A stretch of 63,574 nt of DNA, filler included, from Octopus bimaculoides (Eukaryota): the NCBI RefSeq assembly GCF_001194135.2. It is 8 parts of 8 records of this genome, joined end to end, with 100 filler letters (N's around TTAATTAATTAA, not from the genome) between each part and the next. Parts side by side here need not be neighbours in the genome. Positions count along the whole stretch, not along the records: positions 33,610 to 42,072 come from NC_068997.1; 7 more parts are not named here. The stretch is one strand, 5' to 3'. The notes beneath the pieces were generated by a model, which was given only the letters and a program-made list of their open reading frames with translations, had not been told where the DNA came from and made no database searches. Below are positions 33,510-42,172 of this stretch, one piece after another (position 1 is the stretch's first letter; the number at the start of each line of letters is the position of its first letter). The position numbers were made by a program, and so were the translations under genes.

Positions 33510-33609
33510 NNNNNNNNNNNNNNNNNNNNNNNNNNNNNNNNNNNNNNNNNNNNTTAATTAATTAANNNNNNNNNNNNNNNNNNNNNNNNNNNNNNNNNNN
33601 NNNNNNNNN

Positions 33610-34314
33610 ACCACATTTTGGGTGGGATAATCTCCCACTCCACAGCAGTGGCCTTATTTTTCTTTATATTCTCTGCCATGAGAAAAATGTCCACATAAGA
33701 ATAAACACAACGAAAAATTTTAAACACAGGCAAAAAGAGAAAACAGTTCAAAAAAGCGGAAGAAATAAAATTAACAGTTCGTACTTAAAAAAAAGTCCAT
33801 AAAAGAAAGAGAAAGGAAAGACAACAGTTCAGAAAGAATGAATAAAAATTTACAGTTCCAGGCAGAATAAAACTTTTCAGGCCACAACAGTACTCCAGCC
33901 CAATTTGATCCCGGCTCCGCTGCAGTCGTCACTTTGCTGGTAAAATCCAATCCTTTGCACAGTTCCACGTGGTGAAATTCAAAGCAAGATAAAACTTTTC
34001 TTCAAATTAGTAGTTTTCAAAACTTGGTTTGAAAATAATAAATTTTTCCAAAGTTCACAATTTTTGGAGGAGGGATACCCCCAAAACACACTTCTCACCG
34101 CTAAGTGAGACTTTAAGCACAACTACAGGCAGACAAATACATGGAACTCAGTAGAAATTTATTGTTCGACAAAAATAAATAGACACTAGCAACAAACCTC
34201 CACTAAATCCCCAAAACACAAACGTCTTACCTGTAGTTGTGCGACAACAATTCATGACGCTGGCATACAGCGACGTGACAGCAGCAGCTAAAAAACACGT
34301 CCACACAGAAGTGA
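33610..34314 (-). mobile_element. 5' end (about 635-nt UTR plus ORF1 start) of an L1/Tx1-like element, cut by an assembly gap
   Basis: Begins tcacttctgtg directly after SINE-head TAGCTTGCTTACC. T-rich UTR, then ATG at 33679 (MAENIKKNKATAVEWEIIPPKMW, gap). Class assignment is by analogy with 54728-55932. Confidence 0.55.
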
Positions 34315-34350
34315 GGTAAGCAAGCTACTTACCACACAGCCATTCCTACG

Positions 34351-34352
<2 letters not shown>
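34315..34352 (-). mobile_element. SINE family A head truncated at the insertion site
   Basis: Reverse complement gacgtaggaatggctgtgtggtaagtagcttgcttacc, followed by unrelated sequence. Confidence 0.85.
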
Positions 34353-34394
<42 letters not shown>

Positions 34395-34395
<1 letters not shown>

Positions 34396-34758
34396 GGGCG
34401 TGGCTGTGTGGTAAGAAGTTTGTTTCCCAACCGCTTAGTTCCAAGTTCAGCCCCACTGTGTAGCAGCTTGAGCAAGTGTCTTCTACTATAGCCTCGGCCG
34501 ACCAAAGCTTTGTGAGTGGATTTGATAGACGGAAACTGAAAGAAACCCGTGTATATATTTTTTTGCGCGCGTGTCTTTATGTTTGTTTGTCTCCTTCCAC
34601 CGCTTGACAACCGTTGTCGGTGTGTTTACGTCCCTGTAACTTAGCAGTTCGGCAAGAGTGCCAGATAGAATAAGAACTAGGCTCTAAAAAAACAATAAGT
34701 ACTGGGGCCGATTCGTCTGACTAAAATTCATGACTGAAACAAGTAAGAGATAAAAGAT
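34395..34758 (+). mobile_element. SINE family A, near full length
   Basis: gtggctgtgtggtaagaagtttgtttcccaacc...gacggaaactgaaagaaacccg...cttgacaaccg...tgactgaaacaagtaaga. Confidence 0.92.
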
Positions 34759-35149
34759 ATAGATGATAATGGTAGCTGTCTACTCGTGACTGAGGAAGAT
34801 CATCACTGACAACTAAGAACACTGTGCACGCAGACAAATTTACAAATTACACTTGTGGATCCACTGGTGATTAATAAGCCCATCCTTTGAAAGACATACA
34901 CGTCCGCAGATACTGCAGGCAAAACGTCCCCCATTCGCTACACGGTGGTGCATTTTCAAGCAGCTTGCTTAAGTTCAGTATGCAAAATACGTGTCTCTTC
35001 AAAAATACTTACTCCCTTCGTGACACCTTTCTTTCATAGGTGGCGATGACAAACAGTGCTTTCTCAACTGACCATCCGTATCTCACATGACTTCCAGAGT
35101 TTTGAGGACAGTAAAACCACCTCTTAGCTAAATTACTCTGACTCGAAGT

Positions 35150-35500
35150 AGAAGAATCTGTCAGCGTCTCAGCTATGGGTTTGTTAGCAAATCAGTTGAG
35201 CAGATGGAACTCGTTGAGCATCTAAGGAAAGGAAAACCCTGGTTCCAAACTTTTTCTGCCTTGTGGCTATACTTAGCCATGGGAAGACTTCGGAATATGC
35301 CTTGAGGGAAAATCGGATGTCGAAGCCCCTGAGGCAGTTCGACATTCTCTACAACCTCTTTCTGGCAACTGCGACAACGCTAGAGCCAAATTGTAACAAT
35401 CATACTGTTTGTTCCTTTGGATCCATCAGTGACGCGGAAAGGAGGGACAAGCTCCATGGACAACAACCTGTCCTCCATATCATATTGTACAGGCTTGGTT
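35150..35500 (+). mobile_element. Probable RTE-type LINE 5' UTR fragment
   Basis: ggaaaaccctggttccaaactttttctgccttgtggctatacttagccatgggaagacttcgg resembles RTE 5' UTRs as I recall them. Not verified. Confidence 0.35.
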
Positions 35501-35859
35501 CTTATCGATGAGCCTCTACTGAAGAGAGAGAGAACTGGACTTCTAAGCTACCGGGAATAAAACAGATATATTACGTAATTTGGTCTTTGGACCAGAGACA
35601 GTTGTCATATTTCTTCCTAGGCTAGAGATAACGACTTTTAAGTGACGTTAGTATGGTTAATGATTAATCTAATATTTTAAAATCAATAATTAAGGGAAAA
35701 CAAAGCGGGAAAGACTGTTGTAAACGTCCTGAGAAATCATTTCATGTAGGTGACAAATGCTGAAAAGCATCGAAATTCTATAATCGGTTGACGAAATTCT
35801 TTCAGAATACTGGCGAACGGCACATCTGTATCAAATGATTTTACCGTATCGCGGATCAT

Positions 35860-36050
35860 CAGCCAATCAGTGAAACTTATATAGAATAATACTGACCGAA
35901 CAGCTAATGCTGTCGTGGAAAGCTGGCGCGCTATATTCTGACAGGCTGCTTCTGTCGCTAAAAGTTAATTTATATACAGCCCACTAGCGTTCCGCAACAC
36001 CACTAGCTGTTTGGCTAGTATCAGTCTATATCGGTTTGACTGATTTTCTG
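35860..36050. repeat. Degenerate inverted repeat (about 50-bp arms), MITE-like
   Basis: cagccaatcagtgaaacttatatagaataatactgaccgaacagctaatg vs reverse complement cagaaaatcagtcaaaccgatatagactgatactagccaaacagctagtg. Confidence 0.65.
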
Positions 36051-36442
36051 TCTGGTATTCAGCTTGGTTAGATGTCACTAATGATCCATGATGCAGTGAA
36101 ATCATGCAGTGCCGTCCTCCGGTGTACTGATGGAATTCTGTCGAGCGTTAATAGAATTTCGATGTTCTTTAGCATTTGTCGGCTACAAGAAATGATTTTT
36201 CAGGATGTTTATAGCAGTCTAAGACATTATAATGTCTTAGACATTATAATGCTGGAACCCAAGTTAGGTTGGATGTACTAATCAATATTTGTAATAAAGA
36301 GGGAAAGAGTTATAAAAAATTATGTGCATATGTTCATATACATGAGTATTTGTGTATGTGCATACATAAATGTGTGAAATAATCAGCGTAAATATCCCAG
36401 CTCAGTGTAAATAAAAATCATTATTTTTTTTTTTTTTCCAGA

Positions 36443-36512
36443 ATGATTGCGAAGGTTGCCAATCTTTTAATATTGTTATTTCTGCTAATGAGAGCCTCAC
36501 CCACTGATGCAC
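36443..36512 (+). CDS. First coding exon of an unidentified secreted or membrane protein (signal peptide MIAKVANLLILLFLLMRASPTDA), partial CDS
   Basis: T-run plus CCAG acceptor at 36440-36441, ATG one base into the exon, basic-hydrophobic-TDA signal-peptide pattern, GTGAGT donor at 36513 (phase 1). The other two frames contain stops. Confidence 0.65.
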
Positions 36513-36724
36513 GTGAGTCGAAAATTGTCCTTTTAATATTTTCTTCAATACCCATGGCCACTTTATTTCAAGTAGAAACTTTCCGACTAAATTTAATAGA
36601 TTACTTCTTGATATCGGAATATTTAAAGAAATGGTGAGATTTGAACTAAGAATGCAGTTCGTTAAAACTATAAGCTTAATAGAAAACAAATAGTAGTAAT
36701 ATAATATTTTCCACAATAATCTTC

Positions 36725-36862
36725 TCTACTATAGGCACAAGGCCTGAAATTTGATGGGAGGGGTTAAGTCAATTACATCAAACCCCCACCCCACCCAGTG
36801 CTCAACTTGTACTTAATTTATCGACTCCGAAATGATGAAAGGCAAAGTCGACCTCGGCAGAA
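36725..36862 (-). mobile_element. SINE family B, 3' part
   Basis: ggcacaaggcctgaaatttg...gtacttaatttatcgactccgaaatgatgaaaggcaaagtcgacctcggcagaa. Confidence 0.85.
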
Positions 36863-37019
36863 ATATTCGCCACAATAATGACATTGTACTTGAGCAAGAA
36901 ACTACTATTATAGAGTAATACTAAAATGCTTCATTCCATCACCTTTTTTTAAAATGTTAAGTCATCCTCGTTCCAGCATTCAAACTGAGGCTCTATATTT
37001 ATGAGTAAATGTGTATATT

Positions 37020-37279
37020 GGAGGTGCAATGGCCCAGTGGTTAGGGCAAGCGGACTCGCAGTCGTAGGATCGAAGTTTCGATTCCCAGACCGGGCGTTGT
37101 GAGCGTTTACTGAGTGAAAACACCTGAAAACTCCAAGAGGCACCGGCAGGAGGGGGGGAAACCCTGCTGTACTCTTTCACCGCAGCTTTCTCTCACTGCT
37201 TCTGTTGTACCTGTATTTCAAAGGGCCACCCTTGTCACACTCTGTGTCTCACTGAATCTCCCCGAGAACTACGTTAAGG
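37020..37279 (+). mobile_element. SINE family C variant, cut by a gap
   Basis: ggaggtgcaatggcccagtggttagggcaagcggactcgcagtcgtaggatcgaagtttcgattcccagacc...ctgtatttcaaagggcca...ccccgagaactacgttaagg. Confidence 0.85.
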
Positions 37280-37419
37280 NNNNNNNNNNNNNNNNNNNNN
37301 NNNNNNNNNNNNNNNNNNNNNNNNNNNNNNNNNNNNNNNNNNNNNNNNNNNNNNNNNNNNNNNNNNNNNNNNNNNNNNNTTGCCAAATTTTTGGTATAAA
37401 AAATATATTTAAACACACA

Positions 37420-38742
37420 CACACACACATAAATGTGTAATAGTGTCTGTCAGTGTGTGTGTTTGAGGGTTACTCTAACTTCTCCCACACCGTCCAACCG
37501 ATTTTAATGATTCTTGGCACATAGGTAGATCACATGCCCTAAAGTTCAAATAAGGCTGGAAGTTTTCGAAAACTCGATAATGCTCATCTGGTATCGATTT
37601 TGTGAGCTCAATCGGGCGTTTTAATGAAAATTCCCATAATGATGTTATTTTTCCTGCAGCTTTTTGCATTTTTTGTTCGATTTTGATGAAAATCGATCAG
37701 TGAGCGAGGCTCATGACAGTGAGTTGATGTCAGTATATGGCGTTGACAAAAAATTGATAATTGCGGCTTAGCAGTGGTTTTATAAAATCAATAGGCTTTT
37801 TGCATGCAAAATACCCATATGCATTTTATTTTGGGCCATAACTTTTATAATTTTTATCCGATTTTAATGAAATTTGAGATGTAGGTAGATATTGTGGTCG
37901 GGGAGACGGTAAAGGTGGTTATTTAATTCAAAAGGGTTTGAAAAGGGCACAAATGCAAATAAGCATTTCCTTAGAGACATTCCTGTCGATTTTGTAGAAA
38001 TTTTACATGTGATTACAGTTCATGTCCATTAGCTGATGCCGGCATGAAGAGTTAACAAAAACTCGATAATTGCACGTGAGCGGGGAATTTTAAGAAATCA
38101 ATAGGCTGTTTGTAAGCAATTACCCATAGGATTAATATTTTATGCTGTAACTTTTACAGAATTCATCCAATTTTGATGAAATTTGACATTTAGGCAAACT
38201 TTATGGTCGGAGTCAAGTGGTAGAATTAAAACTGGTGAAGGCAGGAATCGTCAAAATTCACTCGCAATAAAATAATGAACTGATTTTGGAGAAAATTGAC
38301 CCATGAGTAAAATTAAGTACTTCGTCATATGAAACATCGATTATTCATATAATGTATTGGGAATTAAAAGTCAATGGAATATTTTCATGTAAAGCTCACA
38401 TGGATTCTATTTTATGACATAACCTTAGCACTTTTCTTCGGATTTTGCTGAAATTAGACACGCTGATTAATTTTGTACAGAGGGTGGCATTAAAAGGAGA
38501 GAAATAAACAAACATCACTCTCAACGGGTCGAGGTATACCCAAAAGTTTGACTGCAATTTCAGACAGTCCAGTATGTAGGAGTATGTTGAAAGCGTTAAC
38601 CGGGTAAAATCCCTGCCGAACCACCAGATATAACATCTCAATGGGTAACAGTTGGCACGAAGAACGTAGATTTCAATACAAGGTCAGAGGTGGGCTTAAC
38701 TTCAACACGGAAAACATGAGCAACGCCGGATCCAACGGCTAG
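37420..38742 (+). mobile_element. Non-autonomous Helitron-like element with internal subrepeats
   Basis: (TG)/tctgtc start, recurring CCGATTTTRATGAAATTT motif (about 37498, 37678, 37858, 37987, 38167), and 3' end gagcaacgccggatccaacggCTAG|T at 38739-38743. Confidence 0.6.
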
Positions 38743-38755
38743 TATATATATATAT

Positions 38756-38790
<35 letters not shown>

Positions 38791-38792
<2 letters not shown>

Positions 38793-39960
38793 AATGTCGA
38801 CGGAAAAGTTCATAGCCTGACTACGATACTCTCATGGAATGTGACCAAATAAGGTTTTTATTTTCAACATAGTCCTCCTTGCGGTCCATACACTTCTTCT
38901 GGCGGTGTTGCAGTGCTTGGATCACATTCTTGACAAAAGTTTCATCTTGTTGGTCAAAAATTCATCAACAGTAGATATGATGTCATTATCACTGCAATAC
39001 TGGTTTCCAACCAATTGTTTTTTCAAGTTGGTGAACAGATGATAGTCAGATGGTGCCAAATCAGGAGAATAAGGACAGCGATCAGCCAGTTCAAAGCCAC
39101 AGTTATGCACAGCGGCCATTGAAACCAAGGACTTGTGTGCTGGAGCATTGTCCTGCTGAATCAAGAACCCTTTCGTCAGTTTTCCTGGGTGTTTGTTCTT
39201 GATAGCCTTTTGTAAATGCCTCAGCAAGTTGGCATAGTACTCTCCATTGATGGTGTGGCCCCTTTGAAGATCAATAAATACAATATCATTTGCATCCCAT
39301 AAAACTGAGGCAATCACCTTCCCGGAAGATGAAACGACCTTAGCCTTCTTTGGAGCTAGTGAGAAGGAGTGTTTGTACTGCATGGATTGTCTCTTTATCT
39401 CTAGCTCAAAGTGATGAACCTTACACTCATCCTGAGTTAGGAAACGTTCAAGGAAACCAGCTGGATCTGCCTCAAACAATGTCATATTTTCAAGTGATGT
39501 GATCAGCCTGGTGCGCTTTTGATCGAGTATCAGAAGATGTGGCACCCACCAAGCAGAAAGCTTCGTTATGCCAAGTTCATTATGCAGAATATTCTCAAAT
39601 CTCTCACGGGATATGCTAATAGGACTGGTTATTTGATTTATAGTCAATTGCCTGTCATCCATCACCATATGGTGAACACGATCAATGTTTTCCTCTGTGG
39701 TCGCAGTTGCAAGACGTCCAGGCCTTAGGTCATCTTCAAAACTCTCCCTTCCGCTCCTAACCTCAGCTGCCCACTTTTACACTTTCAATAAAGCTGGAGC
39801 GTCATCCTCTAATGTAGCAACCATGTCAGCATGAATATCCTTGGGACTTAAACCTTTTTTCTGCGGGTACTTTATAACACCACGATGCCAAATTTTGTCC
39901 ATTTTCAAGAGAAGTCGCTACTAGTTAGATTTTAAGTCTTCTTTGAACAGTTAGATGTCG
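38791..39960 (-). mobile_element. Mariner transposon, same family as 5223-6513; one TIR missing
   Basis: Left TIR gtcgacggaaaagttcatagcctgac. ATG at 39902 (MDKIWHRGVIKY). The 248-aa ORF 38922-39668 carries TQDE, QDNAPAH and YSPDLAPSDYHLF with 34 residues between D2 and D3. N-terminal part is frameshifted. Confidence 0.95.
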
Positions 39961-40962
39961 TTATGGTGAGAGAGAGGGAGAGAGAGAGAGAGAGAGTTTA
40001 CGAAAGTGCTACAAATAGTTTCGTGCTTCAGAGTTACAATAATTTGGCCGATTTATACAACATGCCATGTATCTCAAATCGATCTTTCGGGATCAGTGCA
40101 TTTCGTTAGATGCATTTAGACGCCAGGACGCTGGTCTGTGAGAAAACATGAGAAAAAACTTTCATTTCAGCATCTAAAATAAGTTGCTGAGTAAGTGCTC
40201 AGTTAGAATGAAGAAATGTATTGGATTATTCGGCAATCCAGATTCAAAGAGTCAGAATTTTCCATTTTTGCGCATGGATAGATGGACTGATATCTTGAGC
40301 ATTTAGTGGGATTGTCGTTGCCAAGGTAGCTGGGGTTTTTTTTTTATATTGCTTCAAGCTTCATGACTTGTCCAAATAGTTGTCTAGTGACAGTACTGTG
40401 ATACTTGGTGTACTGAGGTGACAGCAGAAAATGATGTGCTAAGGCAAGAATTATTTCTTACCATTTCTTTTGCCGAATTCAGCATGGTTAAAAGATGTCA
40501 TTTGTAATTTAATGAAACTAATGTCAGTACAAACACAAACTTGTGTCACTAGAGCTAGATACCTAAACAGTAAAAAGTGGGAAAATAATACATATACGCA
40601 CACATATAAACGCGCGCATGTATGTAAAAAAAGGAAATGACAAAGGAATAAATTATTATCTTATGAACTTCATTAGCTTACAGCTGTTTCCGCAACAAGA
40701 TGCAGTTGGACTCATAGTTGAGTGCCTGAGTAACACCTTACAGTTTCATCAGAGCCTCACAGATGAAGTACAATCTATTTGGGAAAATAAATACATCTAA
40801 GAATACATACAGGAAAGCATTACCAATGAGAAAGCATATATGCTGGGGATGAAATCCAGGGCTCCTACCATAACTACGATAAGATAAATTCTATGATGTG
40901 TATACTGATGGGTATACTCGGGTGTAGAGAAAGAGTGAATAAATCTATCTATAAGAGTATAT

Positions 40963-40993
<31 letters not shown>

Positions 40994-41280
40994 NNNNNNN
41001 NNNATATATATATATATATATATATATAGTTTGCTCATCTACTCGAAACTGAGTCAGTCTCGTGATCCTGTCGTCTGCTGGAGGATGGTAGAGGTTCACT
41101 CCCATGATGGCAATATATTTGTACTGAGTGCAGTGCTGCACCGAAAACCAGCTGGTAGAAGATCTGCTAAACTAGTAGTAATGTGGAACAACCACTTTCA
41201 TGTGGCGCTCAACTTTACTTGTTAGTATAGTTACTACCCTCATCTCTTCTTCAGATTTTACAACTAGCTACTTTGATTAT

Positions 41281-41500
41281 TACCTCCGCTTTCTCTAAAG
41301 CGGAGGTATTGTTTTCAGTCGTGTTTGTTTGGTTGGTTGTTTATCTGTCTGTGGACAAGATATCTCAAGAACCGCTGGATGGATTCGGGTTAAACTTTCC
41401 GGAATGTTTGCCCTCGTGACTGGCACGAACTGATTAGATTTTGGGATCGATCCGGTACTGGACAAGGATTCTGGATTATTTTTTATATTTTCTTTATTTT
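41281..41500 (+). mobile_element. Helentron-associated (HINE/DINE-like) element
   Basis: Perfect 12-bp hairpin tacctccgcttt-ctct-aaagcggaggta, then (GTTT/GTCT) microsatellite, aagatatctcaagaaccgctggatggatt and gaactgattagattttgggatcgatccgg, as is typical of HINEs. Confidence 0.6.
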
Positions 41501-41715
41501 ACATGTATATGTAAAGTTTTACATAGTTCTCTTGTACACGCACACACATACACACACACACACACGCAAATATACCTCTCTTTTACACACATATACTCGC
41601 ACTTCAAACGCTATCACCCCTATCACCCTTTCTTTTCTCATTCATACGACACTCTCTTTGCCATTTATCTCCTCTGCTTTCATCTCTCACTCCGGCTCTA
41701 TTATATATATATATA

Positions 41716-41970
41716 CTAGCAGTATAACCCGACCTTGTCCGGGTGTGACTTATTACGCCATCTACGATAAGTCTTGCTAGGTGAAAATCAACTAAAAAAG
41801 AAAGCCTTACAATGAAAAAACCCTTATGATGTAAATATGTTCATAATTCAAAAGACGATGAAATCAATAGGGAAATTCTGAAGGCTGTTTTGCGTAAAAT
41901 GATTAAGCATAACATTATTAAGCGTATGTAAATTTCATCCGTCTAATTGGCTATAGAAATGCTTGTGAAA
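41716..41970 (-). mobile_element. Helitron-like 3' end
   Basis: A|CTAG at 41715-41719 next to the imperfect hairpin cccgaccttgtccggg. Internal aaatttcatcc motif. The 5' boundary is uncertain. Confidence 0.5.
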
Positions 41971-42172
41971 ACAACTTGTTGCGCTGCCCTGATTATACAT
42001 TGCAGGGTAATCTCTTTTCGCAGGAGCTAGGACGGCAATTTCTGATGAAGCAATTGCTGGCGATCTGTTGGTNNNNNNNNNNNNNNNNNNNNNNNNNNNN
42101 NNNNNNNNNNNNNNNNTTAATTAATTAANNNNNNNNNNNNNNNNNNNNNNNNNNNNNNNNNNNNNNNNNNNN

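What the first reader, a model, noticed from the sequence alone, without database searches (positions are those of the whole stretch)
33610..34352. Second, unrelated element fused to the same SINE nucleotide (event 2)
Seen: on the minus strand a SINE head reads ...ggctgtgtggtaagtagcttgcttacc and then switches to tcacttctgtgtggacg..., exactly the junction of event 1 (...gcttacc|tggcttccggtt). The two inserts share no obvious sequence beyond a similar first 10 nt (T-C/G-A/G-CTTC-C/T-G). This one has a long T-rich UTR and an ATG at 33679. Both targeted heads carry TAGCTTGCTTACC, while four intact family A heads here (28.4k, 34.4k, 48.4k, 57.1k) carry the variant ...TTGCTTCCC or similar. Inference: two independent families share a target and may prefer one SINE subfamily. 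The 3' TSD is lost in a gap.
Basis: partly seen in the sequence, partly recalled or inferred. Interest (0 to 1): 0.75.

Follow-up and report, generated by a model that had tools for sequence, protein, structure and literature searches.

The report
Truncated SINE head inside a palindrome
A 38-base start of a common octopus-type SINE does stop abruptly next to unrelated DNA, but nothing here shows that this DNA is a mobile element aimed at that spot, and the fragment is more likely an ordinary broken SINE lying head-to-head with an intact one.

Summary
The sequence observation holds. On the minus strand a SINE head (34352..34315, ending ...GCTTGCTTACC) stops at 34315|34314, and the next 705 nt show no similarity to the rest of the SINE.

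This head is the left arm of a 114-nt zero-spacer palindrome (34315-34428). Its centre is (TC)7(TA)9(GA)6-7 and its right arm is the head of an intact plus-strand SINE (34397-34757). The two heads belong to different subfamilies, so they are independent copies.

The break lies exactly at the 3' base of an 8-bp hairpin that only the TTACC variant forms. In Octopus vulgaris transcripts that variant continues normally (…TTACC-AACCA), so it is an ordinary SINE subfamily.

The 705 nt show no transposon hallmark: no long ORF, no Pfam domain in the two ORFs scanned, no terminal signature and no TSD. The ATG ORF has only 23 visible codons.

Most likely this is an ordinary truncated SINE in an unstable inverted SINE pair. 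A template-switch chimera with a tRNA-half-like SINE fragment, or a target-specific LINE (Tx1 or Dong type), remain possible. Interest is low to moderate.

The parts
34315..34352 (-). 5' head fragment (about 38 nt) of a tRNA-derived SINE, TTACC variant. The core GGCTGTGTGGTAAGTAGCTTGCTTACC is 34341..34315.
   Evidence: Pattern match with no chance expectation. 80% identity to the neighbouring plus-strand SINE head. 19-20-nt stretches are identical to O. vulgaris transcript contigs.
34315..34333 (-). 8-bp hairpin GGUAAGUA-GCU-UGCUUACC. Its 3' base is the last SINE nucleotide before the break, and the intact SINE continues with A (a CpA step).
   Evidence: RNA fold -7.4 kcal/mol, z = -2.5. The same 19 nt of the neighbouring subfamily do not fold, 0 kcal/mol.
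34314..34315 (-). The junction: the last SINE base is 34315 and the first non-SINE base is 34314.
33610..34314 (-). It is non-coding in all six frames, and its nature is unknown.
   Evidence: Longest stop-to-stop frame is 76 codons. The two longest ORFs (52 and 65 aa) have no Pfam hit. No similarity to anything else in the piece. No homologue was found, but the database is blind to this genome.
34231..34314 (-). First 84 nt after the junction. They are 49% GC with CpG obs/exp 1.0, against 0.51 in the rest, and they end at CAG|GTAAGA, a 5' splice-site-like sequence.
   Evidence: and direct reading. A site this good is expected by chance in roughly a quarter of 705-nt stretches (my estimate), so this is only a hint.
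33743..33965 (-). Five same-strand copies of GAACTGT within 223 nt of the T-rich part.
   Evidence: 6 matches in the window against 1.3 expected; no shuffle of 100 reached 6.
33675..33784 (-). 110-nt AG-free, T-rich tract ending in ...ctcatggCAG|AG. It looks like a polypyrimidine tract plus a 3' splice site and overlaps the ATG.
   Evidence: This is weak evidence, because AG-free tracts are expected in T-rich sequence.
33610..33679 (-). ATG and 23 open codons (MAENIKKNKATAVEWEIIPPKMW...) running into the gap.
   Evidence: No homologue. The frame is also open for 35 codons upstream of the ATG.
34351..34396 (.). Palindromic compound microsatellite (TC)7(TA)9(GA)6-7 between the two SINE heads.
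   Evidence: It contains 22-nt arms that are 100% complementary (I21).
34315..34428 (.). 114-nt zero-spacer palindrome: reverse-complemented head, microsatellite, then head of the plus-strand SINE. The left arm ends exactly at the junction.
   Evidence: I2 (57-nt arms, 79% complementary). DNA fold -40.8 kcal/mol against -12.1 for shuffles, z = -11.3.
34397..34757 (+). Intact SINE copy of about 360 nt from the other subfamily (…AAGTTTGTTTCCC|AACCG…), with a possible TSD ATATAGA.
   Evidence: The shared 7-mer ATATAGA at 34378 and 34757 is not significant (275 of 2000 shuffles).

Best explanation
The minus-strand head is the remnant of an ordinary SINE copy of the TTACC subfamily. It landed head-to-head with a SINE of another subfamily in the same TA-rich microsatellite.

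Shown:
- The two heads are independent copies. They differ at the subfamily-diagnostic positions.
- Both are preceded by TATA(GA)n. SINE 5' ends in O. vulgaris transcripts are also usually preceded by (T)ATA. This fits an endonuclease preference for TA-rich sites, which would make (TA)n a two-way hot spot.
- The pair forms a strongly cruciform-prone palindrome.

Inferred:
- A full inverted SINE pair with an AT-rich centre is unstable, as closely spaced inverted Alu pairs are (from my own knowledge).
- Everything beyond nt 38 of the left copy was removed or separated by a non-specific event. This was either a deletion or rearrangement provoked by the inverted repeat, or an ordinary nested insertion.
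- The break fell at the base of the 8-bp hairpin.
- On this reading the 705 nt are neighbouring DNA or an unrelated sequence, not an element aimed at this nucleotide. A few weak features resemble a promoter, first exon and intron.
For: - Zero-spacer palindrome whose left arm ends at the junction (I2, z = -11.3).
- The arms differ at the three diagnostic positions. The left arm equals the variant seen in O. vulgaris (27/27 core), so this is not a fold-back copy of the right arm.
- The variant head continues normally as AACCA in O. vulgaris contig comp2876.
- The 5' flanks (T)ATA|GG recur in 5 of 6 O. vulgaris copies and in both copies here.
- The 705 nt have no ORF above 76 codons, no Pfam domain in the two ORFs scanned, no similarity to other repeats in the piece and no DNA-transposon or Helitron terminus.
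- There is no TSD evidence for any compound unit.
Against: - That could not be checked.
- A break exactly at the hairpin base and at a CpA step also fits a defined RNA fragment.
- The left head core has no mutation over 27 nt while the right SINE looks older. The truncation would then have had to follow a fairly recent insertion.
- The exact symmetry of the (TC)7/(GA)6-7 flanks is not explained.
- About two thirds of an octopus genome is repeats (PMC13282606), so the 705 nt may well be part of some transposon.
Confidence: 0.42

Rival explanations
1. Template-switch chimera, or a shared 5' module. A discrete tRNA-half-like 5' fragment of the SINE RNA exists, about 38 nt long, ending after the hairpin at a C|A bond. 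The LINE reverse transcriptase copies it after reaching the end of another RNA. The head thus becomes the 5' end of an unrelated retrocopy. If that retrocopy stays active, the head is a fixed 5' module of a LINE-like family. The junction is then the RNA fragment's 3' end, which is why it would recur.
For: - The break is at the 3' base of a stable hairpin specific to the variant, at a CpA step.
- The upstream flank has the usual SINE 5'-flank signature, TATA plus a purine run, as expected for the 5' end of a retrotransposed unit.
- Precedents: tRNA/L1 chimeras carry 5' tRNA halves of 1-37 nt (bioRxiv 10.1101/2025.02.02.635956). U1/U2 pieces were repeatedly added to the 5' ends of Tx1-mobilised elements (PMC4494074). 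One module of about 70 bp sits on unrelated LINEs and SINEs in molluscs (PMC4758252).
Against: - No poly(A) or tail and no TSD are visible.
- No parental copy of the 705 nt is known.
- The primate tRNA halves are mostly antisense to the LINE, whereas here the head would be in sense.
- The adjacency to an inverted SINE would be a coincidence.
Confidence: 0.2
2. A target-specific non-LTR retrotransposon, for example of the Tx1 or Dong/R4 lineages, recognises the SINE and inserts after nt 38. The 705 nt are its 5' UTR and the ATG at 33679 starts ORF1.
For: - Abrupt junction.
- About 635 nt of non-coding sequence are followed by an ATG with an open frame.
- The GAACTGT x5 cluster could be promoter repeats.
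- Tx1-clade elements are known to target other transposons and microsatellites (PMC4494074).
- O. vulgaris has recently active L1-Tx1 (13 families) and Dong-R4 families (PMC13282606).
Against: - No RT, EN or ORF1 domain is visible, and only 23 codons without a homologue can be read.
- Two unrelated families sharing the same 5' junction nucleotide is unexpected for target-primed reverse transcription.
- The TTACC variant is a common subfamily, so 'preference' may only reflect abundance.
Confidence: 0.14
3. Twin-priming chimera with the neighbouring plus-strand SINE. In one insertion event the top-strand 3' OH at 34314 primed reverse transcription of a separate SINE 5'-half RNA from its 3' end. 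This gave the reverse-complemented head upstream of the sense SINE. The 705 nt are then plain target DNA.
For: - The architecture (antisense half, then sense retroelement) mirrors the tRNA-half/L1 chimeras.
- The left arm starts exactly with the complement of the fragment's 3' end.
- It would explain why the followers are unrelated.
Against: - No TSD links 34275-34314 with the 3' flank of the plus-strand SINE.
- The left head is unmutated over 27 nt while the plus-strand SINE looks diverged, which suggests different ages.
- The 46-nt microsatellite between the two 5' ends is unexplained.
- The head has its own normal 5'-flank signature.
Confidence: 0.06
4. Assembly artefact. A short-read scaffold joined the wrong flank through the repeated head or the microsatellite.
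For: The piece carries scaffold gaps (33510-33609, 37280-37379, 40994-41003), and the junction lies in a very high-copy repeat next to a palindromic microsatellite.
Against: The junction k-mers must exist in reads. The left head has its own distinct 5' bases (CGTAGGAAT). The microsatellite is shorter than a read.
Confidence: 0.05

Closest known systems
Closely spaced inverted SINE pairs (inverted Alu pairs) as unstable, cruciform-prone structures
   Same: Two SINE heads face each other across an AT-rich centre and fold as a very stable hairpin. One partner is truncated.
   Different: The instability and its role in the truncation are inferred from knowledge of Alu pairs. No empty or ancestral allele was seen here.
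tRNA-half/LINE-1 and U6/LINE-1 chimeric insertions (template switch or twin priming)
   Same: A small Pol III-type RNA piece of about tRNA-half length ends at a defined nucleotide and is fused to unrelated sequence.
   Different: The piece here comes from a SINE rather than a tRNA. No TSD or tail is visible. The orientation relative to the 705 nt is sense, while primate tRNA halves are mostly antisense.
Target-specific Tx1-clade LINEs (Tx1L in Tx1D, Tx1-Mar in Mariner-N4_AMi, Kibi in (TC)n)
   Same: This would be an element sitting at one fixed position of another repeat. The lineage is active in octopus.
   Different: No RT/EN, no second copy and no target continuation are shown here.
Shared 5' modules of LINEs and SINEs (LP-SINE 70-bp module; U1/U2 heads of SINEU and Tx1; Pr77 of ingi/L1Tc)
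   Same: A short identical 5' piece sits on otherwise unrelated elements.
   Different: Only one such fusion is visible here. That the head belongs to the follower is unproven.

Membership tests
tRNA-derived SINE (head fragment) | Sequence identity to the 5' head, including the A-box region, of the SINE family present in the same genome | tested here: met
   27-nt degenerate pattern: 2 matches against 0 expected. 80% identity over 46 nt to the neighbouring copy. 19-20 nt identical to O. vulgaris SINE heads.
tRNA-derived SINE (head fragment) | Continuation into the B-box, body and tail | tested here: not met
   The following 30-705 nt are not more similar to the SINE remainder than shuffles are.
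Target-specific non-LTR retrotransposon (Tx1 / Dong-R4 type) | Encodes reverse transcriptase and endonuclease, with or without ORF1 | tested here: inconclusive
   Nothing in the visible 705 nt: no frame above 76 codons and no Pfam hit for the two longest ORFs. Coding sequence, if any, lies behind the gap. The 23 visible codons have no homologue.
Target-specific non-LTR retrotransposon (Tx1 / Dong-R4 type) | Many copies at the same position of the target, with the target continuing after the 3' end | not testable with these tools
   The 3' side is in the gap. The collections lack this genome.
Chimeric retrocopy by template switching | The small-RNA part ends at a defined RNA terminus | tested here: inconclusive
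   The break is at the hairpin base and a CpA step. This is compatible, but the RNA fragment itself was not observed.
Chimeric retrocopy by template switching | One TSD pair and a 3' tail flank the whole chimera, and a parental copy of the follower exists elsewhere | not testable with these tools
   The 3' end is behind the gap, and there is no access to the genome.
Twin-priming chimera with the plus-strand SINE | A TSD flanks the compound unit 34315-34757 | tested here: not met
   No shared word of 6 or more bases between 34275-34314 and 34725-34830. Some LINE types leave no TSD.
Helitron or TIR DNA transposon end at the junction | A|TC... 5' end (Helitron), or a TA/TTAA/8-bp TSD with a characteristic TIR start | tested here: not met
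   The junction reads ...TTACC|TCACTTCTG. The preceding base is C, there is no TA or TTAA, and there is no hAT, mariner or piggyBac-type terminus (direct reading; the criteria are from my own knowledge).
DNA palindrome / cruciform-prone inverted repeat | Complementary arms with a short or absent spacer, folding far better than shuffles | tested here: met
   57-nt arms, 79% complementary, 0 spacer. z = -11.3.

The most novel reading that the evidence does not exclude
A defined 38-nt 5' fragment of one octopus SINE subfamily ends at the base of a subfamily-specific hairpin. It is recurrently joined to the 5' ends of unrelated retrotransposed sequences. This could happen in two ways: a tRNA-half-like RNA is picked up by template switching, or a Tx1/Dong-type LINE lineage uses this abundant SINE as its landing site. 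Either way, a SINE would be shaping the birth or the targeting of other cephalopod retroelements.
Probability: 0.3. Interest if true: 0.55.

Novelty: already known. Interest (0 to 1): 0.3.

Why it matters
If the break is non-specific, this is routine repeat decay in a SINE-rich genome. The only point of note is that (TA)n tracts collect SINEs in both orientations and create fragile palindromes.

If the same break recurs genome-wide, it would be the first invertebrate case of one of two things. One is SINE-RNA halves feeding chimeric retrotransposition. The other is a LINE lineage targeted to a SINE. Both bear on how the very large and diverse octopus SINE and LINE populations arise.

The test is cheap once a genome assembly can be searched: tabulate what follows ...GCTTGCTTACC.

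Tried and rejected
- **Exact-ORF look-ups:** six window ORFs, including the mariner ORF and ORFs flanking the junction, gave nothing.
- **Protein homology:** the 47-aa N-terminal frame and a six-frame composite of 33610-34352 gave nothing. A control with SINE frames plus the mariner ORF found only three fish or metagenome mariners and no SINE ORF. The database is therefore blind to this genome, and one search carries no weight.
- **The search of protein representatives:** It was not used afterwards, because a 23-codon query cannot reach significance.
- **SINE-head pattern in public contigs:** 0 hits in metagenome, prokaryote-genome and viral contigs.
- **Rfam and ARAGORN:** Rfam gave only sub-threshold miRNA-like hits caused by the palindrome and microsatellites. 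ARAGORN found no tRNA.
- **'The follower is an internally deleted SINE':** rejected. An alignment that looked plausible by eye is no better than shuffles (p = 0.23-1.0).
- **'The left arm is a fold-back duplicate of the right arm':** rejected. The arms differ at the subfamily-diagnostic sites, and the left arm equals the O. vulgaris variant.
- **Structured RNA in the first 150 nt:** rejected (z = 0.25).
- **Words from the 705 nt, and the junction, in the 400 kb of O. vulgaris transcripts held as a supplement:** none found. The sample is far too small to mean much.
- **Full-text search for the head sequence in papers:** none found.

Full report
**What is there**

The usable piece is 33610-42072, with scaffold gaps at 37280-37379 and 40994-41003.

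On the minus strand the sequence reads ...(TA)9(GA)7-C-GTAGGAATGGCTGTGTGGTAAGTAGCTTGCTTACC | TCACTTCTGTGTGGACGTG.... A degenerate head pattern matches only twice in the window, with none expected by chance:
- 34315-34341 on the minus strand, which is this head
- 34402-34428 on the plus strand, which is the head of an intact SINE of about 360 nt at 34397-34757

Similarity to the SINE stops at 34315. The next 30 to 705 nt are no more similar to the rest of the SINE than shuffled sequence. This holds against both the local copy and an O. vulgaris copy.

**Source of the SINE**

Stretches of 19-20 nt of the head (GGTAAGCAAGCTACTTACC and AGCTACTTACCACACAGCCA) occur identically in Octopus vulgaris transcript contigs. 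These contigs are held as a supplement of PMC9115989. This agrees with my recollection that this is the abundant octopus SINE.

The head is the left arm of a zero-spacer palindrome. The arms are 34315-34371 and 34372-34428, 79% complementary (I2). The centre is (TC)7(TA)9(GA)6-7. The right arm is the head of the intact plus-strand SINE. As single-stranded DNA it folds at -40.8 kcal/mol, against -12.1 for shuffles (z = -11.3).

The two heads are not copies of each other.
- The left one carries T, C and A at the three diagnostic sites (GTAAGTAGCTTGCTTACC). This is the variant found in O. vulgaris.
- The right one carries AAGTTTGTTTCCC.
- The first nine or so bases next to the microsatellite also differ.

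So two SINEs of different subfamilies sit head-to-head.

Both are preceded by TATA(GA)n. In 5 of 6 O. vulgaris copies the SINE 5' end is likewise preceded by (T)ATA, for example TTATA|GGTGCAGAAGTGGCTG and TTTATA|GGCGTGGCTG. This suggests a TA-rich target preference, which would make (TA)n a hot spot in both orientations. That last step is inference.

**The junction nucleotide**

The last 19 nt of the variant head form an 8-bp hairpin, GGUAAGUA-GCU-UGCUUACC (-7.4 kcal/mol, z = -2.5). The same stretch in the other subfamily does not fold at all. The break is at the 3' base of this hairpin. In an intact copy the next base is A: contig comp2876 reads ...GCTTACC-AACCA. The variant is therefore an ordinary subfamily with a normal continuation, and the break is at a CpA step.

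**The 705 nt (34314 down to 33610, minus strand)**

- No frame exceeds 76 codons.
- The two longest ORFs have no Pfam match.
- Nothing else in the piece resembles this stretch.
- The junction has no Helitron, hAT, mariner or piggyBac-type terminus (direct reading).
- The first 84 nt are 49% GC with CpG obs/exp 1.0, against 0.51 further on, and they end in CAG|GTAAGA.
- A 110-nt AG-free, T-rich tract ends in ...CAG|AG at 33673/33672 and overlaps the ATG.
- GAACTGT occurs five times on one strand within 223 nt.
- The ATG at 33679 opens only 23 visible codons before the gap. They have no homologue.

These features fit a LINE 5' UTR, a host promoter with first exon and intron, or plain non-coding DNA about equally well. 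The splice-like sites are not statistically compelling.

**What could not be done**

- Exact-ORF look-ups found nothing.
- The protein database returned nothing for the 705 nt. It also returned nothing for frames of the SINE itself, so it does not see this genome's repeats and the negative result is empty.
- The head pattern is absent from metagenome, prokaryote and viral contigs.

As a result, copy number, other junctions, the 3' end and the empty site remain unknown. Event 1 lies outside the piece.

Event 1 may be a small internal deletion rather than an insert.

**Explanations**

1. *Ordinary truncated SINE (0.42).* An inverted SINE pair around an AT-rich centre is a cruciform-prone structure. 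By analogy with inverted Alu pairs (my knowledge), it invites deletion or rearrangement. Alternatively, an unrelated sequence was inserted non-specifically. This reading uses the one strongly non-random feature that is visible, and it needs no unseen element.

2. *Template-switch chimera or shared 5' module (0.20).* A tRNA-half-like SINE RNA fragment ending at the hairpin base is copied onto the end of another retrocopy. Precedents are:
   - tRNA 5' halves (1-37 nt) in L1 chimeras (bioRxiv 10.1101/2025.02.02.635956)
   - recurrent U1/U2 5' additions in Tx1-mobilised elements (PMC4494074)
   - a 70-bp module shared by unrelated LINEs and SINEs in molluscs (PMC4758252)

Tx1-clade elements target other transposons and microsatellites, and L1-Tx1 and Dong-R4 families are recently active in O. 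vulgaris (PMC13282606). It has no positive evidence here. Two unrelated families sharing one 5' junction nucleotide would also be unexpected for target-primed reverse transcription.

4. *Twin-priming chimera with the plus-strand SINE (0.06).* No TSD supports it, and the two heads look different in age.

5. *Misassembly (0.05).*

**Verdict**

The interpretation cannot be decided with the data reachable here and has no positive support. The default reading is ordinary repeat decay, so interest is 0.3. A simple genome-wide tally of what follows ...GCTTGCTTACC, together with the sequence beyond the gap, would settle it.

Noticed in passing
34351-34396: Exactly symmetric compound microsatellite (TC)7(TA)9(GA)6-7 between two independent SINE heads. 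The 22-nt arms are 100% complementary while the adjoining SINE bases differ. Six O. vulgaris SINE copies lack such a (GA)n leader. The symmetry is unexplained; hairpin-templated correction is one possibility.
   Followed up: partly
34301-34308 and 34332-34339: The 8-mer CCACACAG (minus strand CTGTGTGG, the A-box core of the head) recurs 6 nt after the junction inside the non-SINE sequence. It could be chance or a trace of a microhomology event.
   Followed up: no
window 34345-34400 and O. vulgaris contigs in the PMC9115989 supplement: SINE 5' ends are usually preceded by (T)ATA. The TTACC subfamily seems to start about 11 nt further upstream than the A-box (GGTGCAGGAGTGGCTG...). This suggests a TA-rich target preference of the mobilising LINE.
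   Followed up: partly
38800-39930 (-): Mariner-type transposase pseudogene: a 248-aa ORF plus frame-shifted N-terminal pieces. Pfam Transposase_1 at 3.5e-16. The best database relatives are fish SETMAR/Mos1-like proteins at 52-59% identity.
   Followed up: partly
37480-38480: Three to four degenerate tandem copies of a unit of about 270-360 nt (…CCGATTTTAATGAAATTTGA…TAGGTAGAT…), 63-79% alike. This is an unclassified tandem or satellite-like repeat.
   Followed up: no
35712-36220: Fold-back structure with 112-nt arms, 79% complementary, 285 nt apart. It looks like a MITE or fold-back element.
   Followed up: no
37027-37279 (+), cut by the gap: A different tRNA-like SINE (GGTGCAATGGCCCAGTGGTTAGGGC...GTTTCGATTCCCAGACC). 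It is not called by ARAGORN or Rfam.
   Followed up: no
36716-36915: Another interspersed-repeat-like block (…CTACTATAGGCACAAGGCCTGAAATTTGATGGGAGGGG…GGCAAAGTCGACCTCGGC…). I recall it as a second abundant octopus repeat; this was not verified.
   Followed up: no
36443-36514 (+): Exon-like segment: ttttccag|A ATG ATT GCG AAG ... GAT GCA C|gtgagt. It encodes a signal-peptide-like start (MIAKVANLLILLFLLMRASPTDA). It may be the first coding exon of a secreted or membrane protein, about 2.1 kb from the junction on the opposite strand.
   Followed up: no
38721-38756 and 41702-41737: 36-nt inverted repeat (81%) joining two (TA)n tracts about 3 kb apart and bracketing the mariner remnant. These may be the termini of a larger element, or a microsatellite effect.
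   Followed up: no
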